Notes under the pieces: model-generated | Database searches by the model: none | Seen by the model: only the letters and a program-made list of their open reading frames with translations | What the model was told of the DNA's origin: nothing | Position numbers and translations under genes: made by a program | Part shown: one piece after another, positions 1-31,281 of the stretch | How the letters are laid out: every line of letters starts with the position of its first letter | How positions within the stretch are numbered: position 1 is the first letter of the stretch | Origin: Blastocladiella emersonii ATCC 22665 | Lineage: Eukaryota; Fungi; Blastocladiomycota | Direction: 5' to 3' | Length of the DNA stretch: 32,196 bases | Assembly: GCA_025594325.1 (NCBI GenBank) | Contig: JANHCV010000020.1 | Coordinates: 1-32,196 of the forward strand

Positions 1-84
<84 letters not shown>
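1..84 (+). repeat. (CTG)28 microsatellite = polyQ-coding CAG tract of the C2 gene on the minus strand, cut by the window edge
   Basis: 28 perfect CTG units at 1-84, then TTG CTG TGG. On the minus strand it is in frame with ...HYQQQPQQ. Confidence 0.95.
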
Positions 85-88
<4 letters not shown>

Positions 89-918
89 TGTGGCTGCTGC
101 TGGTAGTGCGAAGGCGGGCGGTCGGGCAGCGCCGGTGGCGCGACATTTCCGCCATTTGGAACGTGGCCATGGCTCGGCGGCATGCTGGCCGACTGCGAGG
201 AGTGGGCATACCCGTAGTGTGCAGCAGTGGTGGTAGCGGTCGCCGAGGTGTGCGACGACGACGAGACCGACGCGACCGAGACGACCGAGTACCGGTGCGG
301 GTTCGAGTTGGCAAACGGGCCGCCGCCTGGCGCCACCAACTCGCCCTTTGGCGGTGGCAGCGGTGGCGGCGGAGCACCACCGCTGCCCGCGCTACCGCCT
401 GCCCCGAAACCGACACTGACACCGCCAATACCACCCGGCGAGACATGCTGCGCGGGGACGGCGCCCGTCAGGTGCGACACGACGGGGAACCCGCCCGACG
501 CGTCCGGCACCTCGGTGAGCACGCCCATCTCCGTGTGCACGCCTGCTGCCATCTGGCCAAACGACGGCGCGTTGCGGATCCCGAGGCGGCCCTCGAGCGT
601 CCCAATCACCTGGCCGGCGTGGTTCTGGATCGGCACGCGGAACTGGAACAGCGAGCCGCCGGTCGCGGGCAGGTCGCGCACGCGCAGCTGGCCGTGGCCG
701 ACGCGCGCGCCGAGCCGCTGCGAGTGGACCTCGATCTGGAGTGCGCCCTCGCGGTAGTCCTATTCGTGCGTTTGGTCGGGTCAGTGGGACTGAAAGTTGG
801 GAGAGGCCCAACACGAAGGCGCACAAACGTACGCGGTACGAGGTATTGAAGACGAGCAGCGGGGCCGTGTTCCAGCTCGCCGTCGGGCCGGCCTGCGTCG
901 CGGGCGGCGTGGTCACCT

Positions 919-954
<36 letters not shown>

Positions 955-1794
955 TGGAGGACGATCCACTGTCGCCGGCCGCCTCGTTGGCGGCGCCGCC
1001 ACTACCGGAACCAGCAGCCGTCGCAGGAGAGATTTCGAGGTACGGCTCGTGGATGTGGTTGCCCGCGACGCGCAGCAGGAGGGCCTCGAACGTGCACGTA
1101 ATGTCGTTCCACAGGTCCATGTCGAGGTCGAACAGGATCTTGCCTGCTGGATGCTTGGCGTGCTACGTGTGCGCGGACGGGTGCTCGTGAGTAGGGCGGC
1201 CAGTGCGGGCGGGTAACGGGTGGTGACGCACGTCGCGCAGCGGCAGCTCGTGCTTGATGGGCCCGCGGGCCAGCGTGAGCAGGTCTGGACGCCGAACTTG
1301 GGGTGTCAGCCGAGTTTAGGGGACGGCAGCAGCAATGGGACCGCACCGACTTCGCACGCCCCGATAAACTCGTCGCGGCGCCACCGGTCGTGGTCGTACA
1401 CCTCGATGCGGAACCGCTTGTCGCGGAGGTGCTCGACGTAGCGCTACTGGGTTTTGGCGGGCGCGGTGGGTCGGATCAGCCGCGGGTCCCCGTACGCCCA
1501 GTAACAGGAGGAAGCCGTGCGCACCGTCTCGTAGAAAAAGGTCACGTCAAAGTCCCACGCCGGATTCAGGTCGCGCTTGACGACCTCGGACTTGCCCGTC
1601 TTGAAGTTGTCGAACGAGAAGCGGAACTGCGGGTCGCTGGTGCCGTTGCTGTCGCGCGCGGGCAGGTTGAGGGCGCGCACGCTGTGCAGGCGGACGCGGA
1701 AGCGGGCGTTGCTCCCCCCGCCGGCACTTGTAGAGGAAGAGCCGGACGACAGGCCGCTGGTGCCCGTGCCGGTGCCGCCAAACGCGGAGGCCAT
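1..1794 (-). CDS. C2-domain protein (probably two C2 domains) with polyAla, Pro/Gly-rich and polyQ regions; 3' end outside window; left-arm copy
   Basis: Mirror of 30406-32196. N-terminal C2 motif RVRLHSVRALNLPARDSNGTSDPQFRF...VVKRDLNPAWD...IEVYDHDRWRRDEFIG; four GT-AG introns keep the frame. Confidence 0.85.
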
Positions 1795-2074
1795 GGTCTG
1801 TCGGTCGGGGTGTTCAGGGTGCCGTCGTCGGGTGCGCAGCGGTTGCGGCTGCTTCCATGAGATTTCGTCTGCGGGTTGGTTGCCTCGGCGGGGTGCGGGT
1901 CGAGAGGAGGGGGAGCGGCCCGCTGAGGCCCGCCGGCGGCAGAGTCCGAAAGTAAAGTGGCGGCGGCGGCGTGACCGCGTCGCTCTTTCTCTTTCCTGCC
2001 TGAGCTCGTCGGCGATGCTCTCTCCCCGGCCGGCACACTGGCCTTGAATGAAGCACTGATTAACACTGAACGTG
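1795..2074. promoter_or_regulatory. Short divergent intergenic region, probably a shared promoter of the C2 gene and the isochorismatase (mirrored at 30126-30405)
   Basis: Two ATGs face away from each other 280 bp apart. No specific element was identified. Confidence 0.5.
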
Positions 2075-2909
2075 ATGCTGTCCCGCCTGCTGCCCAAGAA
2101 TACGGCCTTTTTCCTCTGGTGAGTGAGTGCCCCGCCACGCCGCGTAACTAGCGCCTAACCCCTCGCTCGCCGCGGACAATACATACCCTGAACACACCCA
2201 GCGACGTCCAGGAGCGCTTCCGCCCGCTCATCTTCCGTTTTGCGGACGTGGTCGCCACCTCGGACAAGATGGCGCAGGCCGCCAAGGCGCTCGGCGTGCC
2301 GCTCGTCGTCACCGAGCAGAACCCGGCGCGCCTCGGCCAGACGGTCGCCGAGATTGACGTGGCACACGCCGCCGTCAACGTGCCCAAGACGCGCTTCTCC
2401 ATGGTCGTGCCCGAGGTGGCCGACCTGCTCGCCGAGCGCGCTGTCGAGAACGTGGTCGTGTTTGGCATCGAGGTGCGTGCCTTCACGTTAGACTCTGCCG
2501 TTGCCTCAAATCGCTGACAACCCTGTCCTCTCCAACAACAACAGAGCCACGTCTGCGTCACACAGACCGTCCTCGACCTCCTCGAGCAGGACCCCAAGCG
2601 CGCCGTCTACGTGCTCGCCGACGGCGTGTCGTCCATGAACCCGGCCGAGATCCCGGTCGCGCTCAAGGTTCATCCTAGCTCGTTCCCACTCGTTGCATGG
2701 ACCTGAACTCACTCGGCCTGCCCCTCGCATCGTGTGTGTAGCGCCTCTCGGCCGCGGGCGTCGTCGTCACCTCGTCCGAGTCGGTCCTGTTTGCCCTGCT
2801 CAAGGACGCCAAGCACGCCCAGTTCAAGGACGTGAGCAACCTCGTCAAGGCCTTCCAGACCCGCGGCCAGGACAATGAGCTGTTCAAGTTTGTCGCCAGC
2901 AAGCTCTGA
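2075..2909 (+). CDS. Isochorismatase-family (ISOC/YcaC-like) hydrolase, 201 aa, 4 exons (2075-2118, 2202-2472, 2545-2667, 2742-2909); left-arm copy
   Basis: Spliced product [23 protein letters not shown]...[13 protein letters not shown]...KTRFSMV...[20 protein letters not shown]...VLADGVSS...[12 protein letters not shown] carries the family motifs (CDVQE, TEQ, K-x-x-FS, GIE-x-HVCV). Exon total 606 nt. Confidence 0.92.
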
Positions 2910-4029
2910 AGACTGTTGGTTCTCGCTCGCTCTCTTCAGGCTGCGAGGATCCGGGTTGCTGGAATGCCATGTATCACTATTTGCGTGTCTTCATGTGCAT
3001 CAGTGTGTTGAGCTTGAGCGTGGGTCGGCAGCACGAAGCGGACCTGCAATGCCTCGATTGTGATCGCGATCGCGACGAACAATCATGTGACTGACGGCGG
3101 TGCGAGACGCGTCGTGTCGCGGGCGGCCGAGTGCGAGACGCGACGCGCGTGAAGTCGCGCCGCTGGCCATCGCGCGCCGCCCCCGCCCCTGCCCATGTCG
3201 ATTCCCGAAATCGCGCCTGCCGCGGCACTCGCCCCGCGGCCATCGCCTCGGGCCAAGGCGCAGGCCGATCCCGCCGTTGCTCCCGTGGTTACCGCGTCCC
3301 CCACGGCGTGGCTCGCGCGGCCATCGCGAACCCGCTGCTCACGCCCTCGCGCAGGGCACAGCAGCTGGCACAGCAGCTGGCTCAGCCTGATGGCCTCTCC
3401 TCGATGCCTCGCACCCAGGCGCCGCGTTGCGCACCCGCCGCGGCAAATAGGGAGGGATCGCGCCGCGAAGCTGGATGGATGGATGCCCTGCGCTGCAGAT
3501 CGGGATAGCGCGCGTGTATGCGCCGCGGTGAGAGACGCGGACGGGTGCCGCTCGCCACACGCCAAGGTCGACCATGACCTTGACCGGGACCCGATGGCGA
3601 TGGTCGCGTGGTCGCGTCCATCCCTTGTTGTTGCTGTTTCTGTTGCTGTTGCTGGCCGCGCGATCGCGTATCCCTGCTGCCAGCCTGGCATGGCGGGCGG
3701 CGTCACGCACGCACACACTTGGTCTGCCCCCGTTGCGTGCGTCGCGTACACATTTTGGTGGAGATAACCTGAACTACTCCTGACCCCCGCGCACGCACTC
3801 GGTCCTCGTCCACCGGCCCGACCCAGTCACCACCTCCACCACGCAGCTCGTCGCGCTGAACCCTCGCTCAGGTGCTCTCGCGACCTCTACCCTCTTCCCA
3901 AACCTGTTGCCCCACAAGCGGCCCTCCGTCTCGCCGTCGGGCCCTCCTTCAGCATCTGCCTCGGCCGCCTCGCTCCCGCTCCCAAACTCGCTGCTGCTCC
4001 GGCACCAATCATCCGTTTCCGTGGCAGCC

Positions 4030-7000
4030 ATGTCGCCCCCGTGCCCCATCAACCAGCTCTCCGGCAACTCTGGCGGCGGCGGCGGCGGCGGCGCCGGTGA
4101 CATTCCGGGCCTCGCCCGCCTCGACTCGAACCACGGCAGCCGCCCATCGCGGTTGAACGGCGGCGGCGGCGCCAGCGACGGCCCGAGCAGCCCCGATCGC
4201 CGCAAGCTCATGATCCAGGACGACGGCACGGGCAACGGCACCAGCAACACGTACAACGCAGGCTACGGCCTCGGCGGCCTCGGCGGGCTCGACAACGGCG
4301 GCGGGGGCGGTGCCACGTCGCCGTTCCCCGCATCGTCACGCAACAGCCTCGGCGGCGCCGGCGGCGGGTTCGGCGCGGGCGACGCGCTGCTCAACCCGAT
4401 GCAGGCAGCCTCGCTCGGGTTCGACATGGACGGGCACTCGAGTGGCTCGTCTTCGTCATCGCCGTTCGGTCTCTCTGGTGGCAGCGGCGGCCATGGCGGT
4501 AACACGCACCACGGTGGCGGCCACGGCCACGGCGGCCAAGAACAGCAGCAGGACCAGCGGTACGCGGGCGAGACCGAGCAGCGCGACTCGATCAACTCGT
4601 GGCGCGACTCCATGGACACGAGCCTGCGGCGCATCTTCGAGAACCTTCGTGTCGGTGCGTTTTCCTCTTGCTCATGGACTTGTTGACGTGTCGCGGTGTG
4701 GCGCAGCGCGCGTCGCCGGCTGATATCCCACCGATCACGCGCGCTGCGCCACATTCCCCGTCCTCGGCTTACTGCTGCGTCGGACCATCAGTCTCACTGC
4801 CACGGACCGCACCACATGTAGATATTGACCGCATGGAGGTCAACATCCGCCAGGCCGAGAACGAGGTCTTCCGCAAGGTACGGTCCCCCACCTCTGACCC
4901 GACCGCGAGCCTGACCAAACTGAACTGACGACCGACGACGCACCCCACCACAACCCGAAAACAGGAAGAGGAGGCCTTCTTCATGCGGCAGGACGAAATC
5001 GAAATCAACCAGCTGCTCAAGCGGCAGGCCGACGAGCTGCAGCGCGCCGAGGACGTGTACCAGGCCATGCTCGAGGAGCGCAAGACGCGCAAGCACACCA
5101 AGAAGCTGCAGGCCACGATCCACAAGGAGGCCAAGGCGCGGCACTCGAAAATGTGCTACCAGGACGAGGCCAAGCACATGGCCATGCAGCTGCGCAACAC
5201 GCTGGCGCAGCACCGCAAGCGCTTCGAGTTCCTCATCATCCACATCGAGGCCAAGCACGAGCGCCAGCGCGGCCAGCTCGAGGAGTCGCAGGAGCGCAAG
5301 ATCCGCGAGCAGCGCGCCCTGCTCGAGATCGAGACGCGCGGCCTGCGCGACGAGGTGCGCGCCGAGGTGTTCAAGGACTTCGCGTACCGCATGAACCACC
5401 AGACGGCGCTCGACAAGCACGTTGCCGAGCAGCTGCACGACCTGCAGCAGCTCGAGCTCAAGCACCGCAAGGAGCGCTTCGACGCCGAGGCCAAGGCGCT
5501 CGAGGAGGTGGCCTTTCTGCGGGCGACGCACCACCGCATCGTCAACGAGCTCGAGACCAAGCAGCGGCTCGACTACGCGGCCGAAAAGGAGCGCATCGAC
5601 GAGGCGCGCGAGAAGATCAAGCTGATGCAGCTCGACAGCAAGCACGGCGCCGAGCTCAAGTCGCTGCGCGCGCTGCACAAGGTGCAGGTGACGCTCGCCG
5701 CGCGGTCGCAGCGGCTGCTGGCGTCGCTGCGCCTGAAGAAGTGGCGCGAGATCCTGGCCGCCGAGGACGACTACGAGATTGAGACGTCGGCGAGCATGAC
5801 TGCCGCCGTCAGCCTGTCGACGGTCGGGTCGCAGGCCGCGCTCAACACGGGTGGCGGCGGTATCGGGGGTGGTGGTGCCAACGACTCGGACAATATCAGC
5901 CGGTCCGGGTCGACGAGCTCCATGGGCAGTCTCGCGCACCACTCGGCGGTCCTCGGCGGCGACGAGAGCGGCGCCGCGTCATCCTCGTTTGCGCTCGGCG
6001 GCATGGGTGGTGGTGGCATGGGCGGCTCGAGTATCGGGGGTGGCGCCGGCGGAGACGATGCCGAGACAGCCACGGCCGCGTCCGAGCAGCGCGACGCCGA
6101 CTCGGCCGCCGCGCGCCAGTTTGCCGAGGACCAGGCGCGCGCGCAGGAGCAGCTCAACCGGCTCCTCGAGCACCTCAAGGTCATGGTCGGGCGGCAGGCC
6201 GACGAGCTCAAGCGCGTGCGGCGCGAGAACGTCGAGGAGATGCGGCGGCTCGAGCGCAGCATCAAGACGCGCATGGACGAGCTCGACCTGCAGCAGGACA
6301 CGGAGATGCGCAGCATGCGCAAGTCGCACGAGTCGGCCATCAACGACATTGTCACGATGCAGCAGCGCGAGTACCAGATGGACGCCAACATCCGCGTCAC
6401 GGAGCGCAAGATGCTGACGGAGCGGCGCACGCTCAACTCGATCCTCGACGCCGTGTACGACGCCATTGTCAACATCCGCCCCGACGGCACCATCACGCGC
6501 TTCAACCTCTCGGCCGAGAAGATCTTTGGGTACAAGGCCGACGAGGTGATTGGCAAGAACGTGCGCATCCTGACCCCCGAGGAGGTGTCGCGCCGCCACG
6601 ACGGGTACCTCTCAAAGTACCTGACGACGGGCGTCAAGTCTAAGGCGTGGAACGGCATCTCCAACTTTGGCCGCCGCAAGGACTCGACGCTGTTCCCGAT
6701 CGTGCTGTCGGTCTCGGAGGTCAAGGAGGAGGACTTCCACCTGTTCACGGGCGTGGTGCGCGACGTGACCGACAAGCAGCGCAGCGAGGAGGCGGCGCGC
6801 GCCGAGCAGGAGCGCAAGGAGTCGGAGATGAAGGCGCTCATCTCGCTGCTCGACGTGGAGCGCACGAAATCGCAGTCGCTCATCAAGGAGATTCTGCCCG
6901 AGACGATCGCGGCGCAGCTGATGCGCGGCGAGGCCGTGGTCCCGCGCACGTACCCGGACGCGACGGTGCTGTACACGGACCTGGTCGGGTTCACGGCCAT

Positions 7001-7778
7001 CTCGTCGGCGGCGCGCCCGCTCGACGTGGTCGACATGCTCAACGACCTGTACTCGTCGTTCGACGAGATCATCGAGCAGTACGACGTGTACAAAGTCGAG
7101 ACGATCGGCGACTCGTACATGGTCGCCTCGGGCGTGCCCCGCCCGAACGGCACCAAGCACCTGACCGAGATGGCCAAGCTCGCGATCCACCTGGTCAAGG
7201 CGATCGGGTCCATCAAGATCCGGCACCGGGCCGATGTGACGCTGCGCATGCGCATCGGCATCCACACGGGCCCCGTGGTGGCGGGCGTCGTTGGCCGCAA
7301 GATGCCGCGGTATTGCCTGTTCGGCGACACGGTCGCGATTGCGAGCAAGATGGAGTCGTCGGGCGTGCCCATGAAGATCCAGGTCTCGGAGACGACGCAC
7401 GACCGGCTCGACGCCCTCGGCGGGTTCAACTTTGAGGCCCGCGGCGAGATGAACATTCCGGTCCGTACTACCCTACCTCTCTCGAGTGGGCGTGGTTTCG
7501 TGAGAAGCTTTGGTGGCTGACACTCGCTCCTGGTTGGCGTCACATCGTAGGGCAAGGGCATGATGCGCACCTACTTCCTCAGCGGGTGCGACGGCTTCAA
7601 CCCGACGTTCGTGCCCAAGGAGGAGGGCGCCGGATCGCCCCTCTCGGCCCTAGCCGTCAACCCCAACGCGGGTTCAACCAAGCTTGACCCCTCGGTGCCC
7701 GCCAACCCAGCCGATACCATTTCCGCTTCTCATGCCACGCATTATCAGCGTGACGACGCACGGGGTCAAGCCCTTTGA
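4030..7778 (+). CDS. GC-A: soluble helical-domain + PAS + class III guanylate-cyclase protein, ~1134 aa, 4 exons (4030-4654, 4822-4877, 4965-7460, 7551-7778)
   Basis: Cyclase motifs VLYTDLVGFT, VYKVETIGDSYM, RIGIHTGPVVAGVVG, PRYCLFGDTV, then RGEMNIP|GKGMMRTYFL across the last intron. PAS at ~6433-6773. GTP-specifying E and C present. Exon total 3405 nt. The start is inferred from the first in-frame ATG and N-terminal similarity to GC-B. Confidence 0.92.
6870..7150 (+). repeat. 281-bp block identical to 10896-11176 (cyclase domain of GC-A vs GC-B)
   Basis: Read base by base from tcgcagtcgctcatc... to ...cgcccgaacgg; offset 4026; no mismatch found by eye. Confidence 0.9.
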
Positions 7779-8381: not shown

Positions 8382-11300
8382 ATGTCGTGCCCGTTCCGTC
8401 CCGCCGCGGCTGCCCCCGGGCCCCAGACTGGATCCGCCTACGACAGCGACGGCTATATTCCGGGCCTCGCTCCGATGCCGCGCCGCAACGTCGGCCCGCC
8501 CGTCATCGGCACCGACATGGACAACCAGCCCATGAACGCCCATCTTCCGGGTACTGCCCTTGCCTTCGCGCTCAAATCACCCATCCCGATCCTGCGAACT
8601 GACACTTGAACGCCGCTAGCACTCACGGCAGGCCTTGGCGACGCTCTGAACAGCAGCAACCCCTCCTCGCTCGTCGCGTCGGCTCCTCGTAAGTTTGGTG
8701 GGAGCGAGCTGGCCGCCAACTCGTCGAGCACGGCAGATGACTACCAGGGCCGCAACGGCTTCCTCGTCAACACCGATGACCAGCGCATGCAGGTGCAGCT
8801 CGACAACGACAACGACGACCCCGTCAACTCGTGGCGCGCCAACATGGACTCGTCCGTTCGCCGGATTTTCGAGAATCTTCGCTACGGTTCGTTGCTTATG
8901 ATCGGACGAGTTTTTTCCCCCCTCAGAGCTAACGCGCACCCGTGTCCTCGTCTACTAGACATTGACAAGATGGAGGTCAACATCCGCCAGGCCGAGAACG
9001 AGGTCTTCCGCAAGGTCCGTGTGCCCATGCAGCCGATCATTCGCCGAGTAGCCCACTAACGCGATCCGATGCGATTACCGTAGGAGGAGGAGGCTTTCTT
9101 CATTCGCCAGGATGAGATCGAGACCAACCAGCTGCTCAAGCGCCAGGCCGACGAGCTGCAGCGTGCCGAGGAGACTTATCTCACTATGCTCGAGGAGCGC
9201 AAGACGCGCAAGCACACCAAGAAGCTCCAGAAGCACATGCATAAGGAGGCCAAGGCCCGCGACGCCAAGATCATGCACCAGGACCACGCCAAGCACATGG
9301 TCTTCGAGGTCCGCAACACGCTGGCGCAGCACCGCAAGCGCTTCGAGTTCCTCATCATCCACATCGAGGGCAAGCAGGACCGCCAGCGCGTGCAGCTCGA
9401 GGAGTCGCAGGAGCGCAAGATGCGCGAGCAGCGCGCCCTACTCGACATTGAGACGCGCGGTCTTCCGGAGGACCTTCGCGCCGAGGTGTTCAAGGACTTC
9501 GCGTACCGCATGAACCACCAGTCGACTCTCGACAAGCACGTCGCCGAGCAGCTTCACGATATTCAGCAGCTCGAGCTCAAGCACCGCAAGGAGCGCTTCG
9601 ACGCCGAGGCCAAGGCGCTCGAGGAGGTGGCCTTCCTTCGTGCAGCCGATCAGCGGCGCGTGAACGAGGTCGACACTGTGCAGAAGGCCGAGCTGGCGAC
9701 CGAGAAGGAGCGCATCGAGGAGGCGCGCGAGAAGATCAAGCTGATGCAGCTCGCCGTCCATCACGCGGCCGAGGTCCGCAAGCTCAAGGCCCTGCACAAG
9801 ACACAGCTCGCCCTCTCGGCCCGGATGCAGCGCATGCAGGCCAGCCTGCGCCTCAAGAAGTGGCGCGAGCTGCTCCTCAGCGACGACGACGAGACCAACG
9901 AGTTTGCGAGCGCCTCTCTCTCGAACATGCAGGCGAGCGTCTCGACGGTCGGGTCCGGCGCCGGTATCGGCACCGGAGACGACATCAACAGCATGAGCCG
10001 CAGCGTCTCAAGCAGCTCGGTCGGTAGTAGCGTCTCGGTCGCCAACCACCTTCCCATCGGCGACTCGGGCGGCAGCACCGTCTCGGGCCCGTCCGCCGAC
10101 GACCAGTTTGAGCAGCGCGAGGCCGAGCAGGCGTTCTTCCGCGCCCTCGACGACGAGCAGATCAAGGCCCAAAACGACCTGAACAAGCTGCTCGAGGTTC
10201 TCGCCACCACGCAGACTCGACAGAAGGAGGCCCTCAAGAAGCTGCGCAAGGAGCAGAACGAGGCGCTGCACCAGACCGAGCGCGACATCAAGTCGCGCAT
10301 GGAGGAGCTCGATCTGCAGCAGGACACGGAGATGCGCAGTATGCGCAAGTCGCACGAGGCGACCATCATGGAGATCATGGCGACACAGCAGCGCGAGTAC
10401 CAGATGGACGCGAGTATCCGCCTGGCCGAGCGCAAGATGCTCAACGAGCGCCGCACGCTCAACTCGGTCCTCGACGCTGTCGCCGACGGCATCATCAACA
10501 TCCTGCCCGACGGCACCATCACGCGCTTCAACATGGCCGCGGAGCGCATCTTCGGGTACACGACGGCCGAGATTGTCGGCAAGAACGTGCGCATCCTGAC
10601 CCCCGACACGGTGAGCAAGCACCATGATGGCTACCTGCGCCGGTACCTCACGACGGGCGTCAAGAAGGTGATCGGCGTTGGAACTAGTTCTCTCGCACGA
10701 AACGCGTCCGGCGCCGAGTTCCCGATCCGCCTCAGCGTGTCCGAGGTCAAGGAGGAGGAGTTCCACCTGTTCACCGGGATCGTGCGCGACCTCACCGAGG
10801 AGCGCAAGCACGAGGCTGCAGTGCGCTCGGAGCTCGAGCGCAAGGAGTCGGAGATGAAGGCTCTAATTGACCTTCTCGACGTCGAGCGCACCAAGTCGCA
10901 GTCGCTCATCAAGGAGATTCTGCCCGAGACGATCGCGGCGCAGCTGATGCGCGGCGAGGCCGTGGTCCCGCGCACGTACCCGGACGCGACGGTGCTGTAC
11001 ACGGACCTGGTCGGGTTCACGGCCATCTCGTCGGCGGCGCGCCCGCTCGACGTGGTCGACATGCTCAACGACCTGTACTCGTCGTTCGACGAGATCATCG
11101 AGCAGTACGACGTGTACAAAGTCGAGACGATCGGCGACTCGTACATGGTCGCCTCGGGCGTGCCCCGCCCGAACGGGTCCAACCATCTCGTGGAGATCGC
11201 CAAGCTGGCCCTGCATCTCCTCAAGGCGATCGGGTCCATCAAGATCCGGCACCGGCCCGACGTGACGCTGCGCATGCGCATCGGCATCCACACGGGCCCC

Positions 11301-11702
11301 GTGGTGGCGGGCGTCGTCGGCCGCAAGATGCCGCGGTACTGCCTGTTCGGCGACACGGTCGCGATTGCGAGCAAGATGGAGTCGTCGGGCGTGCCCATGA
11401 AGATCCAGATCAGCGAGACCACGTACGACCGCCTCGAGGCCATGGGTGGCTACCACTTTGAGCCGCGTGGCGAGATGGGCATCCCCGGCAAGGGTATGAT
11501 CAAGACCTACTTCCTCACGTCGCTGGACAACTTCAACCCGACCTTCACCCCGCGTGACGACTCGGTCGCGTCGCCGCTCTCAGCGCTCGCCGTTGGCGGG
11601 ACCAAGGAGCACCGCGGTGGCGACATCTTTGTCGGGTCCAGCACCGTCCAGAGCAACCACCACGAGCACGCTGCCGCTCGCCCTCACGGAGCCCAAGGTT
11701 AG
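8382..11702 (+). CDS. GC-B: tandem paralog of GC-A (helical domain + PAS + guanylate cyclase), ~1036 aa, 4 exons (8382-8550, 8620-8886, 8959-9014, 9084-11702)
   Basis: Same domain order and motifs as GC-A and shares the 56-nt exon (DI-D-x-MEVNIRQAENEVFRK). All three introns have GT..AG with a branch-like site; exon total 3111 nt is open. Confidence 0.92.
10896..11176 (+). repeat. 281-bp block identical to 6870-7150 (and to its mirror 25050-25330)
   Basis: Same comparison. A second block, 11221-11408 vs 7195-7382, differs at only 4 positions. Confidence 0.9.
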
Positions 11703-11997: not shown

Positions 11998-12375
11998 TCA
12001 GGCCGACTTCACGGAGCCGGCGGTCGAAGGCTTGTTGAGCGCAGCCTCAACCATCCCCTTGAGCTTGGTCCCGAGGGCCGAGTCCAGCTTCTCCGTTGGC
12101 GTGGTGAGCAGGTACGCGTCGAGGCCGCCCTTCTTGTCGATAGTACGCAGCGCTGTGGACGACACCTTGATGCGGAAGTGCTGGTCGAGGACGCGCGAGA
12201 AGAGCGAGCGCTCGTGGACGTTGGGCTCCCACGTGCGCCGGGTCTTGTGCTCCGAGTGGCTCACCTTGTTACCGTACATGATGCGCTTACCAGCGAGAAG
12301 CCCGGTGTCGGCGCGCCCGGGCCGCGACCCGCCGCGGAGGAGCGCGCGCTGGACGGCATAGACCGAGAGGGACAT
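11998..12375 (-). CDS. MRPL24: Mitochondrial ribosomal protein bL28m (L28 family), 125 aa
   Basis: GLLAGKRIMYGNKVSHSEHKTRRTWEPNV...IKVSSTALRTIDKKGGLDAYLL is the L28 signature; Arg-rich presequence-like N-terminus. A probable 57-nt 5'UTR intron lies at 12382-12438 (gtgagt...actgac...ctag). Confidence 0.9.
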   Translation of the reverse strand: MSLSVYAVQRALLRGGSRPGRADTGLLAGKRIMYGNKVSHSEHKTRRTWEPNVHERSLFSRVLDQHFRIKVSSTALRTIDKKGGLDAYLLTTPTEKLDSALGTKLKGMVEAALNKPSTAGSVKSA

Positions 12376-12813
12376 GTTGCACTAGGATGCCCAGGGTGTC
12401 AGTCTCCCGGTTTTATCGACCGGGACGCGGATACTCACGTTGGAGATGGTTCACAGGCACGATCGTGTGTGGCGTTGGACAGCGAGCCGCGGAGCAAGTG
12501 TCAATGGGGAGCGTGGGGCGGATGGGCGTATCCCGACCGCGTTGCGTATGGTTACTCGAGGTCCCGGTGCGGTTAACGCTGCATAGGATACATAGATGGG
12601 GAGCGCGACGAGGCTTCGAGCGCTGATCTCGACCTTGCGGCCAGCGAAACAACGCATCGGCTGACCCCAGCTGACTCGGCCGCGCCGCTCCTCCGGCCGC
12701 GCCGCTGCTGAGGCAGAGCCTCTCGAGCGCCAACTGGAGGACCAGTCCCGCTGTCCGTGCCAGTTGAAAGCGTCCCTTCATGCATCTTAGAACATAAAGC
12801 ACTGAAAGAAAAC

Positions 12814-14543
12814 ATGGCTGCCATTGCCGCGTCCGGGGAGGCGTCCCTTGCCAACGTTGTCGATATTCCGTATCGCGTCGACGTCGCCGACGTCGTTGAC
12901 TTCTTCGACCTCCGCACTTCAGTGTGGAGCTCGCTCGAGCGCCACGCGGCTTCTGTCGCGTCCGCCAAGGCGGCCGCTTCGATCGCACCTGCTTTGGCCG
13001 ATGGACCCGTGTCGTTGCCAGTCGTCAAGGTCGGACTCCAGATCCCCGACGAGTTTCTCTCATATGCTGATCGCATCATGCGCGAGCTGCGCTCTCTTGC
13101 AGACGAGCGCGTCGATCCCACGTGGCTGCTCGACGTCTTCATCCTCGCCGACACCCAGTACAGCCCGTGCTGCGTTGACGAGGTTGCCGCCCAGCACTTT
13201 GACGCCGATGCGGTCGTCCATTTTGGCCGCTCGTGCCTCTCCAAGTGCGTTTTCCTGCCGCACCCGTTTCCACGCGGCGGATCCTAACCCAATCTCCACG
13301 CATGTCAGGCCTTCCCACATGCCTGTCGTATTCGCCTTTGGCAAGGTCGCCCTGGACGTCGAGCACGCCGCCGAAGCCATTCTTCACTCGGCGGAGGGCT
13401 CTCAGCCCATCTCCGTCATCTACGACGTGACGCTTATCCACGCCATCCCGCAGCTCAAAGCCGTCCTTGCTAGCCACGGTGGCTCCGACCGTGTTCGGTT
13501 CTGCGACGTGGCGCAGGTCGACAATGGCGGATATGTTCGCTACGTGCCGACGCGGGAAGTTCTCGCCGGCCACACGATCGTGCTCCTCGGGCCCCCTTCC
13601 TCGCTGGTGGGGCACTACTCGCTCGTGTTCAGCCAGAACAACGTATGGAGTCCTCCGTACTGCACGATCATGTACTCGAGCGGTCGCTGACCCCCGCACC
13701 CTGCTCGCACTGTAGCTTTACCACTACAATCCGCTCGACATGGACTGCTCACGGCCGCGAAGCATCCTCATGAAGCGGTACGCGCTCATGCAGAAGGCCC
13801 GCGACGCGAGCATCATCGGCATTGTCGTGGGGACGCTCGGCGTGGCCAACTACATTGACGCAATCGCTGGGCTCAAGCGCATGATCCGTGCGCACGGCAA
13901 GAAGTACTACACGTTTGTGCTGGGCAAGCTCAACGTCGCAAAGCTCGCCAACTTCATGGAGATTGACGTGTTTGTCCTGGTGGCGTGCCCCGAGAGCTCG
14001 CTCATCGACTCCAAGGAGTTTTACCGCCCCGTCGTGACACCGTACGAGCTTAGCATGGCGCTCGACTTTGGCAGTTCGTGGACCGGCGAGTACAAGCTCG
14101 AGTTTGGCGAGGTGCTGTCGCACATGCAGGAGGTGGAGCGCGACGGTGACGAGTACGTTGCTGACGCCGAGGGGGGTGTGGGCGCCGAAACCGACGGTCC
14201 CGAGGGCGCGTCCACGGGTGCGGGTGCTGCGAACGTCAAGGGCGGCGATGGCGAGAGTGACGACGATCCTGACCAGCCGTACTTTTCGCTCGTGACGGGG
14301 ACCTACGTGTCCAAGACCCGCGTCGAGAACAACGCCGAGATCCACTCGCGGATCCGCGATCTCACGCTGCGCGACGCATCCACGATGCAGCTCGCATTCC
14401 AGTCGCCGGCGTCGCAGCACGTCGCGACGCGCTCGTGGCGGGGGCTCGAGGTGACTGCGCGCGAGGACAAGTCGCTCGACCTCGTTGAGGGCCGGTTTGG
14501 CAATGCGGCGGGCTACGAGGGTGAGCAGGATCGAATGGAGTAA
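12814..14543 (+). CDS. DPH2: Diphthamide biosynthesis protein 2, ~530 aa, 3 exons (12814-13244, 13309-13642, 13716-14543)
   Basis: Motifs [73 protein letters not shown]; acidic C-terminal region typical of Dph2. Exon total 1593 nt. Confidence 0.92.
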
Positions 14544-14794
14544 ACTCTAGTCTTTTATAGTATGTCGCTTTGTTGACCAGCTGAGGCATGAGTGTGGGGC
14601 AAGCGCGTCGTGAGGAGCGGCCGCTCAACATTGATCAGTAACGGAGAGAAGCGAGAGTGCGGTGTATTCTTTGGCATGGGGGACGCGGAGCAGGAACATG
14701 ACGTGATGGTCAGAGTGGGTCCAGTGCATGGGATGAAGAAAGGAAGAATTCGGACAGGAGCTGCACCAAGCGCTTGCGACCGTGCACTGCGGCA

Positions 14795-16119: not shown

Positions 16120-16198
16120 CTTGGTCTATGGGTCTAGGGTCGGTGATCTAGGGGAACCGGCGTGAGGCAGGCGGGCGGGCGGCGGGCGGGCGATCCCC

Positions 16199-16205
16199 TT
16201 ATATA
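16199..16205 (-). promoter_or_regulatory. Probable TATA box of the GH19-like gene
   Basis: TATATAA on the minus strand 80 bp upstream of the ATG, an isolated AT island in very GC-rich DNA. Confidence 0.55.
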
Positions 16206-18639: not shown

Positions 18640-18718
18640 ACTGCGCACCACGGGGAGACTATTGCAACACTGCGAATACATGCACTTGAAAGTATCATAT
18701 TACAATGGGAGAGAGCAA

Positions 18719-24436: not shown

Positions 24437-27400
24437 TCACTGAGCTGGCTGCTGGAAGCGGTGGTCGAGCGGCTCCATGCCCGATGATGCAGAGCCATCG
24501 TGGTTCGCGCCGCCGAGCTTGGCCGGGCCTGCGTTGGGGTTGACGGCGAGGGCCGAGAGGGGCGATCCGGCGCCCTCCTCCTTGGGCACGAACGTCGGGT
24601 TGAAGCCGTCGCACCCGCTGAGGAAGTAGGTGCGCATCATGCCCTTGCCCTACGATGTGACGCCAACCAGGAGCGAGTGTCAGCCACCAAAGCTTCTCAC
24701 GAAACCACGCCCACTCGAGAGAGGTAGGGTAGTACGGACCGGAATGTTCATCTCGCCGCGGGCCTCAAAGTTGAACCCGCCGAGGGCGTCGAGCCGGTCG
24801 TGCGTCGTCTCCGAGACCTGGATCTTCATGGGCACGCCCGACGACTCCATCTTGCTCGCAATCGCGACCGTGTCGCCGAACAGGCAATACCGCGGCATCT
24901 TGCGGCCAACGACGCCCGCCACCACGGGGCCCGTGTGGATGCCGATGCGCATGCGCAGCGTCACATCGGCCCGGTGCCGGATCTTGATGGACCCGATCGC
25001 CTTGACCAGGTGGATCGCGAGCTTGGCCATCTCGGTCAGGTGCTTGGTGCCGTTCGGGCGGGGCACGCCCGAGGCGACCATGTACGAGTCGCCGATCGTC
25101 TCGACTTTGTACACGTCGTACTGCTCGATGATCTCGTCGAACGACGAGTACAGGTCGTTGAGCATGTCGACCACGTCGAGCGGGCGCGCCGCCGACGAGA
25201 TGGCCGTGAACCCGACCAGGTCCGTGTACAGCACCGTCGCGTCCGGGTACGTGCGCGGGACCACGGCCTCGCCGCGCATCAGCTGCGCCGCGATCGTCTC
25301 GGGCAGAATCTCCTTGATGAGCGACTGCGATTTCGTGCGCTCCACGTCGAGCAGCGAGATGAGCGCCTTCATCTCCGACTCCTTGCGCTCCTGCTCGGCG
25401 CGCGCCGCCTCCTCGCTGCGCTGCTTGTCGGTCACGTCGCGCACCACGCCCGTGAACAGGTGGAAGTCCTCCTCCTTGACCTCCGAGACCGACAGCACGA
25501 TCGGGAACAGCGTCGAGTCCTTGCGGCGGCCAAAGTTGGAGATGCCGTTCCACGCCTTAGACTTGACGCCCGTCGTCAGGTACTTTGAGAGGTACCCGTC
25601 GTGGCGGCGCGACACCTCCTCGGGGGTCAGGATGCGCACGTTCTTGCCAATCACCTCGTCGGCCTTGTACCCAAAGATCTTCTCGGCCGAGAGGTTGAAG
25701 CGCGTGATGGTGCCGTCGGGGCGGATGTTGACAATGGCGTCGTACACGGCGTCGAGGATCGAGTTGAGCGTGCGCCGCTCCGTCAGCATCTTGCGCTCCG
25801 TGACGCGGATGTTGGCGTCCATCTGGTACTCGCGCTGCTGCATCGTGACAATGTCGTTGATGGCCGACTCGTGCGACTTGCGCATGCTGCGCATCTCCGT
25901 GTCCTGCTGCAGGTCGAGCTCGTCCATGCGCGTCTTGATGCTGCGCTCGAGCCGCCGCATCTCCTCGACGTTCTCGCGCCGCACGCGCTTGAGCTCGTCG
26001 GCCTGCCGCCCGACCATGACCTTGAGGTGCTCGAGGAGCCGGTTGAGCTGCTCCTGCGCGCGCGCCTGGTCCTCGGCAAACTGGCGCGCGGCGGCCGAGT
26101 CGGCGTCGCGCTGCTCGGACGCGGCCGTGGCTGTCTCGGCATCGTCTCCGCCGGCGCCACCCCCGATACTCGAGCCGCCCATGCCACCACCACCCATGCC
26201 GCCGAGCGCAAACGAGGATGACGCGGCGCCGCTCTCGTCGCCGCCGAGGACCGCCGAGTGGTGCGCGAGACTGCCCATGGAGCTCGTCGACCCGGACCGG
26301 CTGATATTGTCCGAGTCGTTGGCACCACCACCCCCGATACCGCCGCCACCCGTGTTGAGCGCGGCCTGCGACCCGACCGTCGACAGGCTGACGGCGGCAG
26401 TCATGCTCGCCGACGTCTCAATCTCGTAGTCGTCCTCGGCGGCCAGGATCTCGCGCCACTTCTTCAGGCGCAGCGACGCCAGCAGCCGCTGCGACCGCGC
26501 GGCGAGCGTCACCTGCACCTTGTGCAGCGCGCGCAGCGACTTGAGCTCGGCGCCGTGCTTGCTGTCGAGCTGCATCAGCTTGATCTTCTCGCGCGCCTCG
26601 TCGATGCGCTCCTTTTCGGCCGCGTAGTCGAGCCGCTGCTTGGTCTCGAGCTCGTTGACGATGCGGTGGTGCGTCGCCCGCAGAAAGGCCACCTCCTCGA
26701 GCGCCTTGGCCTCGGCGTCGAAGCGCTCCTTGCGGTGCTTGAGCTCGAGCTGCTGCAGGTCGTGCAGCTGCTCGGCAACGTGCTTGTCGAGCGCCGTCTG
26801 GTGGTTCATGCGGTACGCGAAGTCCTTGAACACCTCGGCGCGCACCTCGTCGCGCAGGCCGCGCGTCTCGATCTCGAGCAGGGCGCGCTGCTCGCGGATC
26901 TTGCGCTCCTGCGACTCCTCGAGCTGGCCGCGCTGGCGCTCGTGCTTGGCCTCGATGTGGATGATGAGGAACTCGAAGCGCTTGCGGTGCTGCGCCAGCG
27001 TGTTGCGCAGCTGCATGGCCATGTGCTTGGCCTCGTCCTGGTAGCACATTTTCGAGTGCCGCGCCTTGGCCTCCTTGTGGATCGTGGCCTGCAGCTTCTT
27101 GGTGTGCTTGCGCGTCTTGCGCTCCTCGAGCATGGCCTGGTACACGTCCTCGGCGCGCTGCAGCTCGTCGGCCTGCCGCTTGAGCAGCTGGTTGATTTCG
27201 ATTTCGTCCTGCCGCATGAAGAAGGCCTCCTCTTCCTGTTTTCGGGTTGTGGTGGGGTGCGTCGTCGGTCGTCAGTTCAGTTTGGTCAGGCTCGCGGTCG
27301 GGTCAGAGGTGGGGGACCGTACCTTGCGGAAGACCTCGTTCTCGGCCTGGCGGATGTTGACCTCCATGCGGTCAATATCTACATGTGGTGCGGTCCGTGG

Positions 27401-28170
27401 CAGTGAGACTGATGGTCCGACGCAGCAGTAAGCCGAGGACGGGGAATGTGGCGCAGCGCGCGTGATCGGTGGGATATCAGCCGGCGACGCGCGCTGCGCC
27501 ACACCGCGACACGTCAACAAGTCCATGAGCAAGAGGAAAACGCACCGACACGAAGGTTCTCGAAGATGCGCCGCAGGCTCGTGTCCATGGAGTCGCGCCA
27601 CGAGTTGATCGAGTCGCGCTGCTCGGTCTCGCCCGCGTACCGCTGGTCCTGCTGCTGTTCTTGGCCGCCGTGGCCGTGGCCGCCACCGTGGTGCGTGTTA
27701 CCGCCATGGCCGCCGCTGCCACCAGAGAGACCGAACGGCGATGACGAAGACGAGCCACTCGAGTGCCCGTCCATGTCGAACCCGAGCGAGGCTGCCTGCA
27801 TCGGGTTGAGCAGCGCGTCGCCCGCGCCGAACCCGCCGCCGGCGCCGCCGAGGCTGTTGCGTGACGATGCGGGGAACGGCGACGTGGCACCGCCCCCGCC
27901 GCCGTTGTCGAGCCCGCCGAGGCCGCCGAGGCCGTAGCCTGCGTTGTACGTGTTGCTGGTGCCGTTGCCCGTGCCGTCGTCCTGGATCATGAGCTTGCGG
28001 CGATCGGGGCTGCTCGGGCCGTCGCTGGCGCCGCCGCCGCCGTTCAACCGCGATGGGCGGCTGCCGTGGTTCGAGTCGAGGCGGGCGAGGCCCGGAATGT
28101 CACCGGCGCCGCCGCCGCCGCCGCCGCCAGAGTTGCCGGAGAGCTGGTTGATGGGGCACGGGGGCGACAT
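24437..28170 (-). CDS. GC-A': right-arm copy of the PAS-guanylate cyclase, ~1129 aa, with a different C-terminal tail
   Basis: Mirror of 4030-7651. The last exon (24649-24437) reads ...LSALAVNPNAGPAKLGGANHDGSASSGMEPLDHRFQQPAQ*. Confidence 0.92.

Positions 28171-31245: not shown

Positions 31246-31281
<36 letters not shown>

What the first reader, a model, noticed from the sequence alone, without database searches (positions are those of the whole stretch)
6433..6773. FixL-type heme-PAS fused to a guanylate cyclase: candidate gas/heme-sensing cGMP system in a zoosporic fungus
Seen: both paralogs carry a PAS reading ...GKNVRILTP....HDGYL..YLTTG.K...FPI.LSVSE......FTG..RD.T (His codons 6597-6599 and 10623-10625). 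It is followed by a signalling helix and a cyclase domain, with no transmembrane segment. Known: this closely follows the rhizobial FixL heme-PAS ([30 protein letters not shown]), where the His of HDGY is the proximal heme ligand; animal soluble GC senses NO through an unrelated H-NOX domain. Inference: a soluble O2/NO/CO-regulated cyclase built from different parts than animal sGC, plausibly steering zoospore aerotaxis or encystment. I do not know of a characterised fungal example, but could not search.
Basis: partly seen in the sequence, partly recalled or inferred. Interest (0 to 1): 0.82.

Follow-up and report, generated by a model that had tools for sequence, protein, structure and literature searches.

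The report
FixL-type PAS guanylate cyclase subunits
This water mould carries several copies of a soluble cGMP-making enzyme whose sensor closely resembles the bacterial heme oxygen sensor FixL. It probably works only when paired with a second, complementary subunit, much as animal nitric-oxide receptors do, though it is built from different parts.

Summary
The window is a 32-kb contig of Blastocladiella emersonii ATCC 22665. It carries GC-A, present twice as identical inverted copies, and the tandem paralog GC-B. Both are soluble proteins built as a PAS domain, a 42-residue signalling helix and a class III guanylate cyclase.

By sequence (E 1e-25 to 1e-28), by profile (5e-38) and by predicted fold (the top 20 Foldseek hits), the PAS domain is closest to FixL heme domains. 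EcDOS/DosP comes next, and non-heme PAS domains come later. The proximal His aligns exactly, at codons 6597-6599 and 10623-10625.

New here:
- The fusion is conserved across zoosporic fungi (Blastocladiomycota, Chytridiomycota, Rozella). His is kept in 55 of 59 members and the FixL O2-binding Arg in 50 of 59.
- The window's paralogs have lost that Arg (Ile in GC-A, Thr in GC-B).
- Their cyclase lacks the catalytic Asn/Arg (GDTVAIASKMES), which is the sGC-alpha pattern. BeGC3-type paralogs show the complementary beta pattern and lack the His.

Best reading: these are the heme-binding alpha-type subunits of a heterodimeric cyclase, more likely tuned to NO, CO or redox state than to O2. Heme binding and pairing are untested. 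No paper in the searched library describes this. The scan flagged the same fusion on two other pieces of this genome.

The parts
4030..7778 (+). GC-A gene, + strand copy. Exons 4030-4654, 4822-4877, 4965-7460 and 7551-7778, with GT-AG introns at 4655-4821, 4878-4964 and 7461-7550.
   Evidence: Exact mapping of the annotated protein P0002 (H9P43_010198) onto the window, and reading of the splice sites.
6432..6773 (+). GC-A FixL-type PAS domain. Proximal His codon 6597-6599. The position of BjFixL Arg220 is Ile at 6657-6659. The DVT junction motif lies at 6762-6770, within RDVTD at 6759-6773.
   Evidence: Pfam; PDB phmmer; AF2 model m17df294b8972 with pLDDT 81, and Foldseek top 20 all FixL; codon check.
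6774..6941 (+). GC-A signalling helix and cyclase transducer element. Pfam matches this stretch only weakly, as the tail of the HNOBA model.
   Evidence: HNOBA model positions 169-216 of 216, below the cut-off. The equivalent stretch of GC-B is one continuous helix in the model.
6942..7460 (+). GC-A class III guanylate cyclase domain. The metal-binding Asp residues are kept (YTDLVGF at 6972-6992, KVETIGD at 7092-7112), and Glu and Cys sit at the base-specifying positions. The transition-state Asn is replaced by Ala and the Arg by Lys (GDTVAIASKMES at 7323-7358). The domain ends in exon 4.
8382..11702 (+). GC-B gene, the tandem paralog. The 5' exons are approximate: a start near 8382, then an exon ending at 8885. 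The later exons are 8957-9014 and 9084-11702.
   Evidence: tblastn with P0001, P0002 and P0003, and reading of the splice sites; ORF list.
10461..10799 (+). GC-B FixL-type PAS domain. Proximal His codon 10623-10625. The position of BjFixL Arg220 is Thr at 10683-10685. RDLTE lies at 10785-10799.
10794..10949 (+). GC-B signalling helix (model residues 118-159) and short transducer helix (162-169).
   Evidence: AF2 model m90d14c7f6409, pLDDT 87.
10968..11519 (+). GC-B guanylate cyclase domain, with the same alpha-type pattern as GC-A (GDTVAIASKMES at 11349-11384). It is 91-94% identical in DNA to the GC-A cyclase domain.
24440..28170 (-). Second copy of GC-A, inverted (annotated as H9P43_010198 = P0002). 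It is identical to the + strand copy as far as the repeat boundary and has a different C-terminal tail. Its PAS domain lies at 25427-25768.
   Evidence: Depth of about twice the unique region, and both junctions present in DNA contigs.

Best explanation
GC-A (two identical copies) and GC-B encode soluble proteins of about 1,000-1,130 residues. In order, each has a Gly/Ser-rich disordered N-terminus, a charged helical region of about 300 residues, a FixL-type PAS domain, a signalling helix of about 42 residues with a cyclase transducer element, and a class III guanylate cyclase domain.

Shown here:
- The PAS domain is homologous to the heme-binding PAS of FixL and keeps the proximal His on the F helix.
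- The helix emerges directly from the conserved D-x-T junction after the last PAS strand.
- The cyclase domain keeps both metal-binding Asp residues and the Glu/Cys guanine-specifying residues, but lacks the transition-state Asn and Arg. This is exactly the pattern of the animal sGC alpha subunit.
- B. emersonii has a sister group of PAS cyclases (BeGC3 = H9P43_009044, plus H9P43_005231 and H9P43_002510) with the complementary beta pattern: the first Asp is replaced by Glu, and Asn and Arg are kept. Their PAS domain has lost the His but keeps the distal Arg.
- The alpha-type and beta-type groups are sister clades, and both are retained in Coelomomyces, Allomyces, Blastocladiella and Catenaria.

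Inferred:
- The window's proteins bind a b-type heme through this His. They pair, through the PAS domain, the helix and the catalytic domain, with a BeGC3-type subunit to form one complete GTP site.
- Ligand or redox changes at the heme are passed down the coiled coil to switch cGMP synthesis.
- Because the O2-stabilising distal Arg is missing (Ile or Thr), the ligand is more likely NO, CO or the heme redox state than O2. This would make these proteins candidates for the unidentified NO-responsive cyclase of the Ca2+-NO-cGMP pathway reported to control zoospore biogenesis.
- The ancestral chytrid form keeps the His, the Arg and a full catalytic set, and looks like a homodimeric O2-sensing cyclase.
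For: FixL homology:
- phmmer against PDB gives FixL at E 1.5e-25 to 6e-28, in gapless alignments.
- A profile of 57 fungal PAS domains gives FixL at 5e-38, DosP at 3e-23 and LOV domains at 3e-9 or weaker.
- The AF2 PAS model has pLDDT 81. The Foldseek top 20 hits are all FixL heme domains (TM 0.72-0.89, 38-48% identity), followed by DosP/EcDOS and the heme PAS 10jx.

Residues:
- The His is present in 55 of 59 fungal and 88 of 103 bacterial FixL-type PAS domains. Arg220 is present in 50 of 59 fungal and 81 of 103 bacterial domains, but is Ile or Thr in the window's copies.

Architecture:
- One helix spans model residues 118-159 between the PAS domain and the cyclase.
- No transmembrane segment is present.

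Alpha and beta patterns:
- In the alignment with animal membrane GCs and the sGC alpha-like and beta1-like halves of P0077, the window proteins read TDLVGF...GDTVAIASKMES and the alpha-like half reads SDIVGF...GNNVTLANKFES.
- BeGC3 reads TEIEGF...GDTVNTSSRMKS and the beta1-like half reads SGIVGF...GNTVNLTSRTET.

Trees:
- The Blastocladiomycota clade (SH-aLRT 96) splits into an alpha-type clade (96) and a beta-type clade (99), each spanning four or five genera.
- The fungal PAS domains form one side of a branch against the bacterial ones (SH-aLRT 99).

Selection:
- dN/dS between GC-A and GC-B is 0.50 for the PAS domain, 0.23 for the helix and 0.31 for the cyclase.

Literature:
- NO-linked GC activity in zoospore biogenesis, and the absence of a predicted NOS gene, are reported in PMC9730499.
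- Heterodimeric GCs have a precedent in chytrids, the NeoR/RGC pairs (PMC10622942).
Against: - Nothing here shows heme binding. AlphaFold models carry no cofactor.
- In GC-A the FG loop next to the heme is rebuilt (SKAWNGIS, pLDDT below 50), and three pocket and propionate positions differ from the family consensus (Ser, Lys and Ala at BjFixL positions 214-216).
- The PAS dN/dS of 0.5 is the most relaxed of the three folded modules compared (PAS, helix, cyclase).
- The BeGC3 group keeps its PAS domain without the His, so the domain also has a heme-independent, structural role.
- Lys in place of Arg, and Glu in place of Asp, are conservative changes. Weak homodimer activity of either subunit type cannot be excluded.
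- Heterodimerisation is inferred only from complementary residues and co-retention of the two types.
- No RNA run could be listed, so expression of these particular copies is not shown.
- The preference for NO or CO over O2 rests on my recollection of published FixL Arg220 mutant behaviour and was not tested here.
Confidence: 0.55

Rival explanations
1. These are true FixL-like O2 sensors. The window's proteins still bind and report O2, for example for hypoxia or aerotaxis, using other distal residues in place of Arg220.
For: Most relatives keep both the His and the Arg220 equivalent (50 of 59). The fold and the D-x-T junction are those of FixL. The distal hydrophobic residues Leu236 and Val238 are kept.
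Against: In all four B. emersonii alpha-type proteins the Arg is Ile or Thr. No alternative basic residue appears on the G strand. From recalled literature, FixL Arg220 and DosP Arg97 are the residues that stabilise bound O2. PDB holds R220A and R97A mutant entries.
Confidence: 0.15
2. The PAS domain is heme-free. It serves only as a dimerisation and scaffold module, or binds another small ligand, and the conserved His is a relic or has another role.
For: BeGC3-type paralogs keep the same PAS domain without the His. The GC-A FG loop is divergent and poorly modelled. The PAS dN/dS is 0.5.
Against: The His, Tyr207, and the Ile216, Leu236 and Val238 equivalents are conserved across more than 50 fungal sequences separated by long evolutionary distances, in the same pattern as in bacterial FixL-type domains. 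All of the closest solved structures are heme-bound.
Confidence: 0.2
3. These are self-sufficient homodimeric cyclases, or alternatively catalytically dead regulators, with no BeGC3-type partner. The Ala and Lys substitutions would merely lower or abolish activity.
For: Lys can partly replace Arg. From recollection, some bacterial class III cyclases with non-canonical residues at these positions keep low activity. Both subunit types carry Glu and Cys.
Against: The alpha and beta patterns are complementary and match animal sGC exactly. The alpha-type and beta-type groups are sister clades co-retained in every well-sampled Blastocladiomycota genus. Chytrid relatives with a full residue set show that the substitutions are derived.
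Confidence: 0.2

Closest known systems
FixL heme-PAS domain (Sinorhizobium meliloti, PDB 1d06; Bradyrhizobium japonicum, PDB 1dp6 and 8js5)
   Same: The PAS fold matches (TM 0.79-0.89). Identity is 38-48% and the alignment is gapless. The proximal His, Tyr207, the hydrophobic distal Leu and Val, the FPxxLS strand and the RDLT junction into a coiled coil are all shared.
   Different: The output is a eukaryotic class III guanylate cyclase, not a histidine kinase. The distal O2-binding Arg220 is Ile or Thr in the window's copies. The Arg206 equivalent is Lys in GC-A and Arg in GC-B (Asn in most fungal relatives), and the His214 equivalent is Ser in GC-A and Lys in GC-B. The host is a eukaryote and the gene has spliceosomal introns.
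EcDOS / DosP heme-PAS c-di-GMP phosphodiesterase
   Same: It is the second-best sequence and structure match (profile E 3e-23; TM about 0.8). It is a heme-PAS domain that controls a cyclic-nucleotide enzyme through a helical linker.
   Different: Identity is only about 25%. DosP uses a distal Met and Arg97. Its output is an EAL phosphodiesterase acting on c-di-GMP.
Animal NO-sensitive soluble guanylate cyclase (alpha1/beta1)
   Same: It is a soluble protein built as sensor, coiled coil and class III GC. The catalytic residues are divided between two subunit types in the same way: the alpha type keeps the Asp residues but has lost Asn and carries Lys in place of Arg, and the beta type has lost the first Asp but keeps Asn and Arg. 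Only one subunit type keeps the heme His.
   Different: The sensor here is a FixL-type PAS domain, not H-NOX; no PF07700 hit was found. The His-bearing subunit here is the alpha-type one, whereas in sGC it is beta1. The origin of the split is independent, within Blastocladiomycota.
BeGC3 (H9P43_009044) and the B. emersonii cyclase repertoire of Leonard et al. 2022 (PMC9730499)
   Same: It belongs to the same PAS-GC family, with 51% identity over the PAS-to-cyclase region and the same architecture.
   Different: BeGC3 is the beta-type form and its PAS domain lacks the His. The paper inferred NO regulation from an HNOBA hit. Here that hit is 22.3 bits (below the 23.4 cut-off) and covers only the coiled-coil tail of the model. 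The word PAS does not occur in that paper's main text.
Fungal rhodopsin-guanylyl cyclases (BeGC1/RGC) and the NeoR/RGC heterodimers of chytrids
   Same: They occur in the same organisms and follow the same design of sensor, coiled coil and GC. They give a precedent for obligate heterodimeric GCs arising by duplication (PMC10622942).
   Different: Their sensor is a membrane rhodopsin, not a soluble PAS domain, and their input is light rather than a gas or redox signal.

Membership tests
FixL-type heme-binding PAS domain | PAS fold most similar to solved heme-PAS domains | tested here: met
   The AF2 model has pLDDT 81. The Foldseek top 20 hits are all FixL heme domains, followed by DosP/EcDOS. 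The profile search gives FixL at 5e-38.
FixL-type heme-binding PAS domain | Proximal heme-ligand His on the F helix (BjFixL His200, RmFixL His194) | tested here: met
   The gapless alignment puts the fungal His on chain index 61, which is His200. The codons are 6597-6599 and 10623-10625. The His is present in 55 of 59 fungal relatives.
FixL-type heme-binding PAS domain | Distal Arg that binds O2 and the heme propionate (BjFixL Arg220) | tested here: not met
   The residue is Ile in GC-A (6657-6659) and Thr in GC-B (10683-10685). Arg is present in 50 of 59 fungal and 81 of 103 bacterial relatives.
FixL-type heme-binding PAS domain | Hydrophobic distal pocket and FG loop (BjFixL Ile215, Ile216, Leu236, Ile238) | tested here: inconclusive
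   GC-B has Val, Ile, Leu, Val, matching the family consensus. GC-A has Lys, Ala, Leu, Val, with a rebuilt FG loop modelled at low confidence.
FixL-type heme-binding PAS domain | Actual binding of b-type heme | not testable with these tools
   This needs expression of the domain and UV-visible (Soret) spectroscopy.
FixL proper (two-component O2 sensor kinase) | Histidine kinase output (HisKA and HATPase domains) | tested here: not met
   Pfam finds only PAS and Guanylate_cyc domains.
Class III guanylate cyclase | PF00211 catalytic domain with two metal-binding Asp residues and Glu/Cys base-specifying residues | tested here: met
   E 2e-60 and 8e-65. Asp, Glu, Asp, Arg and Cys are present at the aligned positions.
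Class III guanylate cyclase | Transition-state Asn and Arg (GDTVNTASRMES) needed for a self-sufficient homodimer | tested here: not met
   The window proteins read GDTVAIASKMES, with Ala and Lys at these positions. This equals the alpha-like half of P0077 (a fish protein a source names sGC beta-1), NNVTLANKFES.
Animal-type NO-sensitive sGC | H-NOX (PF07700) heme domain | tested here: not met
   No HNOB hit was found. There is only a sub-threshold hit to the last 48 positions of HNOBA, which is the coiled coil.
Animal-type NO-sensitive sGC | Obligate alpha/beta heterodimer with complementary half-sites | tested here: inconclusive
   Complementary residue patterns and co-retained sister clades were found. 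Physical pairing was not testable.

The most novel reading that the evidence does not exclude
Blastocladiomycota evolved an obligate alpha/beta soluble guanylate cyclase independently of animals. Its gas sensor is a FixL-type heme-PAS domain of bacterial ancestry, not H-NOX, and it sits on the alpha-type subunit encoded here. Loss of the distal Arg retuned an ancestral fungal O2 sensor into the long-sought NO receptor of the Ca2+-NO-cGMP pathway that controls zoospore formation. The ancestral homodimeric O2-sensing form would survive in chytrids, including Batrachochytrium.
Probability: 0.3. Interest if true: 0.8.

Novelty: new variant of a known kind. Interest (0 to 1): 0.62.

Why it matters
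Heme-PAS sensors are known almost entirely from bacteria, where they drive kinases or c-di-GMP enzymes. Eukaryotic gas-sensing cyclases use H-NOX or globin domains. A FixL-type PAS domain wired to a guanylate cyclase, and conserved across the flagellated fungi, would be a third, independent way of building a gas-regulated cyclase.

It would also give a concrete molecular candidate for two open problems. One is what senses NO in Blastocladiella, which has NO-dependent cGMP signalling but no H-NOX domain in the PAS-type cyclases scanned here (BeGC3's reported HNOBA hit is only a coiled coil) and no predicted NO synthase gene. The other is how zoospores of chytrids, including amphibian and plant pathogens, might read oxygen.

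The alpha/beta split is a clean natural example of convergent subfunctionalisation with animal sGC. The domain pair is also a potential gas-switchable cGMP tool, alongside the rhodopsin cyclases already taken from this organism.

Tried and rejected
- RNA evidence: no RNA run could be listed for GC-B. A search of any run kind returned only four DNA runs from one sample. Expression and splicing of these copies therefore rest on the public annotation and on splice-site reading.
- Vieira et al. 2009 (PMID 19393757) is not held. My recollection that the heme-oxidising sGC inhibitor ODQ blocked sporulation could not be checked and is not used as evidence.
- The supplements of the genome paper are not held, so I could not see how its orthogroups classify these genes.
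- The Atlas search with the PAS domain returned only generic bacterial PAS clusters and added nothing.
- Pfam on the helical region of about 300 residues upstream of the PAS domain gave only noise.
- Bacterial contamination was considered and rejected. The genes have GT-AG introns, their G+C content matches the rest of the contig, and the cyclase is of the eukaryotic type.
- An assembly artefact as the source of the third copy was considered and rejected. Contig depth in the repeat arm is about twice that of the unique middle, and both junctions are present in the DNA contigs.
- The unrooted PAS tree cannot prove a bacterial-to-fungal transfer. It shows only that the fungal domains have one origin.
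Full report
WHAT THE WINDOW IS

The best database hits are proteins of Blastocladiella emersonii ATCC 22665. One of them, H9P43_010198 (P0002), sits on a contig of exactly 32,196 bases, so the window is that contig. G+C content is 60-75% throughout.

GENES AND COPIES

Two large + strand ORFs, 4983-7520 and 9186-11702, encode paralogous proteins. Mapping P0002 onto the window gives the GC-A gene model: exons 4030-4654, 4822-4877, 4965-7460 and 7551 onward, with GT-AG introns.

GC-B has homologous small exons ending at 8885 and at 8957-9014, and a last exon at 9084-11702.

The contig ends form a 7,681-base inverted repeat that is 100% complementary (4-7684 and 24516-32196). GC-A is therefore present a second time on the minus strand (24440-28170), with an identical PAS domain (25427-25768) but a different C-terminal tail.

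In Logan contigs of DNA run X1, pieces inside the repeat arm have word depth 236-244, against 121-131 in the unique middle. A loose end at 7669 reads into the other flank. The duplication is therefore in the DNA, not only in the assembly.

CHECKING THE OBSERVATION

Pfam finds a PAS domain (PAS_9, E 7e-11 and 4e-10) and Guanylate_cyc (E 2e-60 and 8e-65) in both proteins. It also finds a sub-threshold match to the last 48 positions of HNOBA, which is the coiled coil ahead of the cyclase.

phmmer of the two PAS segments against all PDB sequences puts FixL heme domains first:
- RmFixL 1d06: E 1.5e-25 and 6e-28.
- BjFixL: E 2e-22 and 3e-24.
- EcDOS/DosP: 1e-7 to 4e-10.
- The best PAS domain not labelled as heme-binding: 3e-5 or weaker.

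The alignments are gapless over about 120 residues. This lets every residue be numbered against BjFixL as query index plus 139. The fungal His falls on His200, at codons 6597-6599 (CAC) and 10623-10625 (CAT).

No 19-residue window exceeds a Kyte-Doolittle mean of 1.4, so there is no transmembrane segment.

STRUCTURE

An AlphaFold model of the GC-A PAS domain, built with an alignment of 57 fungal PAS domains, has mean pLDDT 81. Only the FG loop (residues 76-81) falls below 50.

Foldseek against PDB returns FixL heme domains in all of the top 20 places (TM by query 0.72-0.89, 38-48% identity). DosP/EcDOS and the heme PAS 10jx follow, and LOV and NifL domains appear only from about rank 28 onward.

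A profile of the fungal PAS alignment gives the same order: FixL 5e-38, DosP 3e-23, 10jx 9e-13, LOV 3e-9.

A model of GC-B from the PAS domain to the end of the cyclase (pLDDT 87) shows four parts:
- The PAS domain (residues 1-116).
- One unbroken helix (118-159) that starts at the conserved RDLTE junction.
- A short helix (162-169).
- The cyclase fold (177-361).

THE FAMILY

A search with the PAS-to-cyclase region finds the same architecture in many zoosporic fungi and in unnamed metagenomic contigs:
- Blastocladiomycota: Blastocladiella, Allomyces, Catenaria, Coelomomyces, Sorochytrium.
- Chytridiomycota: Batrachochytrium, Synchytrium, Polychytrium, Rhizophlyctis, Nowakowskiella, Entophlyctis and others.
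- Rozella.

A search with the PAS region alone finds, among eukaryotes, only these PAS cyclases. Otherwise it finds bacterial FixL-type histidine kinases at 45-50% identity.

In a tree of 59 fungal and 103 bacterial FixL-type PAS domains, the fungal ones form one side of a branch with SH-aLRT 99. The fusion therefore arose once, before these fungal lineages split. A bacterial origin of the domain is likely, but an unrooted tree cannot prove it.

KEY PAS RESIDUES

Counts across the 59 fungal and 103 bacterial FixL-type PAS domains:

| BjFixL position | Fungal | Bacterial |
|---|---|---|
| His200 | H in 55 of 59 | H in 88 of 103 |
| Tyr207 | Y in 57 of 59 | Y in 80 of 103 |
| Arg220 | R in 50 of 59 | R in 81 of 103 |

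Positions 215, 216, 236 and 238 are Val/Ile, Ile, Leu and Val/Ile/Leu in both groups. The family as a whole therefore has the FixL heme pocket, including the O2-binding Arg.

The window's copies are exceptions:
- GC-A has Ile at position 220. It also has Ser, Lys and Ala at 214-216, in a rebuilt FG loop.
- GC-B keeps Lys, Val and Ile at 214-216 but has Thr at position 220.
- The other two close B. emersonii paralogs (H9P43_002938 and H9P43_008877) have Thr and Ile at position 220.

THE CYCLASE HALF

I aligned the cyclase domain with animal membrane GCs, a Chlamydomonas H-NOX cyclase and both halves of P0077, a fish protein a source names sGC beta-1, which align as alpha-like and beta1-like halves.

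- The window proteins keep the two metal-binding Asp residues (TDLVGF, ETIGD) and the guanine-specifying Glu and Cys.
- They read GDTVAIASKMES where active GCs read GDTVNTASRMES. Asn is replaced by Ala, and Arg by Lys.
- The alpha-like half of P0077 shows the same pattern (SDIVGF, NNVTLANKFES).
- B. emersonii BeGC3 (H9P43_009044), H9P43_005231 and H9P43_002510 show the mirror image (TEIEGF, GDTVNTSSRMKS). This matches the beta1-like half of P0077 in losing the first Asp and keeping Asn and Arg.

The lead for this check came from another note of the scan (s1-248140), and I tested it here.

The BeGC3 group also has a deletion of 2-3 residues that removes the proximal His, while keeping the Arg220 equivalent.

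A maximum-likelihood tree of the PAS-to-cyclase region places all Blastocladiomycota sequences in one clade (SH-aLRT 96). That clade splits into a beta-type clade (99; Coelomomyces, Allomyces, Blastocladiella, Catenaria) and an alpha-type clade (96; Sorochytrium, Coelomomyces, Allomyces, Blastocladiella, Catenaria).

Most chytrid sequences keep the full residue set and look competent as homodimers. Polychytrium shows a separate alpha-type and beta-type pair.

HOW IT MOST LIKELY WORKS

Shown:
- A FixL-homologous PAS domain with the proximal His.
- A continuous signalling helix.
- A guanylate-type catalytic domain that is missing two catalytic residues.
- A co-retained sister family that supplies those residues.

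Inferred:
- The window's proteins bind heme and pair with BeGC3-type subunits to form one active site.
- They switch cGMP synthesis in response to a ligand or redox change at the heme.
- Without the distal Arg, stable O2 binding of the FixL kind is unlikely. NO, CO or redox sensing is the better guess.

This fits the reported dependence of zoospore biogenesis on NO-linked GC activity in an organism with no predicted NOS gene (PMC9730499).

That paper attributes NO sensitivity to BeGC3 because of an HNOBA hit. Here the hit is 22.3 bits, below Pfam's cut-off of 23.4, and covers only model positions 176-215 of 216, which is the coiled coil. HNOBA is in any case not the heme-binding domain. The His-bearing alpha-type paralogs in this window are the better candidates for the heme site.

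dN/dS between GC-A and GC-B is 0.50 in the PAS domain, 0.23 in the helix and 0.31 in the cyclase. dS falls from 0.67 in the PAS domain to 0.18 in the cyclase. This is consistent with homogenisation of the 3' half by gene conversion and with faster divergence of the sensors.

WHAT IS KNOWN

Full-text searches returned no paper describing such a fungal sensor: one query returned nothing and the other hits were unrelated. The searches combined heme-PAS or FixL with guanylate cyclase and with fungi, chytrids or zoospores.

The genome paper lists 11 predicted GCs but never mentions PAS in its main text. Heterodimeric GCs are established in chytrids for the rhodopsin cyclases (PMC10622942).

The proteins exist in public databases as hypothetical or generically named entries. 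The sequences are therefore known, while the reading of the sensor and the alpha/beta split appear to be new.

The scan flagged the same fusion on two other pieces of this genome (s1-283544 and s1-076739).

LIMITS

- Heme binding, ligand identity, heterodimerisation and expression are all untested.
- No RNA run could be listed.
- The key 2009 paper is not held.
- Statements about the role of FixL Arg220 and about the kinetic cost of Asn and Arg substitutions come from my knowledge of the FixL and class III cyclase literature, not from a tool.

VERDICT

It is a new variant of known kinds and is of moderate to high interest.

Noticed in passing
window 4-7684 and 24516-32196: The two contig ends form an inverted repeat of 7,681 bases that is 100% complementary. 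It duplicates the whole GC-A gene. DNA-contig depth in the arm is about twice that of the unique middle, and both junctions are read, so the repeat is real. The two copies end in different C-terminal tails (...NPNAGSTKLDPS... and ...NPNAGPAKLGGANHDG...).
   Followed up: partly
P0038 (BeGC3, H9P43_009044), another contig of the same genome: The published inference that BeGC3 is regulated by NO rests on an HNOBA hit. That hit is below Pfam's cut-off (22.3 against 23.4 bits) and covers only the coiled-coil tail of the model. The PAS domain of BeGC3 lacks the proximal His, through a deletion of 2-3 residues, but keeps the FixL distal Arg.
   Followed up: yes
window 6738-6740 (GC-A) and 10764-10766 (GC-B); alignment A1 position 108: A His in the motif xHLFTG, at the turn before the last PAS strand, is nearly invariant in the fungal PAS cyclases, including the BeGC3 group. 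It is absent from FixL, which has Pro-Tyr-Phe or Arg-Phe-Phe there. Its role is unknown.
   Followed up: no
window 6785-7460 versus 10811-11485: The cyclase-coding 3' halves of GC-A and GC-B are 91-94% identical in DNA (dS 0.18), against about 79% in the PAS region (dS 0.67). This suggests gene conversion confined to the catalytic half.
   Followed up: partly
window 4560-5770 and 8800-9900 (P0002 residues about 180-500): A highly charged helical region of about 300 residues, conserved in all PAS cyclases including BeGC3, has no Pfam match. It is preceded by a Gly/Ser-rich disordered N-terminus that begins with a conserved Cys-Pro motif (MSPPCP, MPCP, MACP, MSCP), which could be a lipidation site.
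   Followed up: partly
family table, (Polychytrium P0028, P0030, P0031 versus P0034; Rozella P0061 versus P0066; Terramyces P0053 versus P0058): Alpha-type or beta-type residue patterns also appear outside Blastocladiomycota, apparently from separate duplications. This hints that splitting of this cyclase into complementary halves has recurred.
   Followed up: partly
window 12000-24500: The unique middle of the contig holds further long ORFs, for example 16654-18639 and 18827-22153 on the + strand and 22517-24046 on the minus strand. I did not examine them.
   Followed up: no
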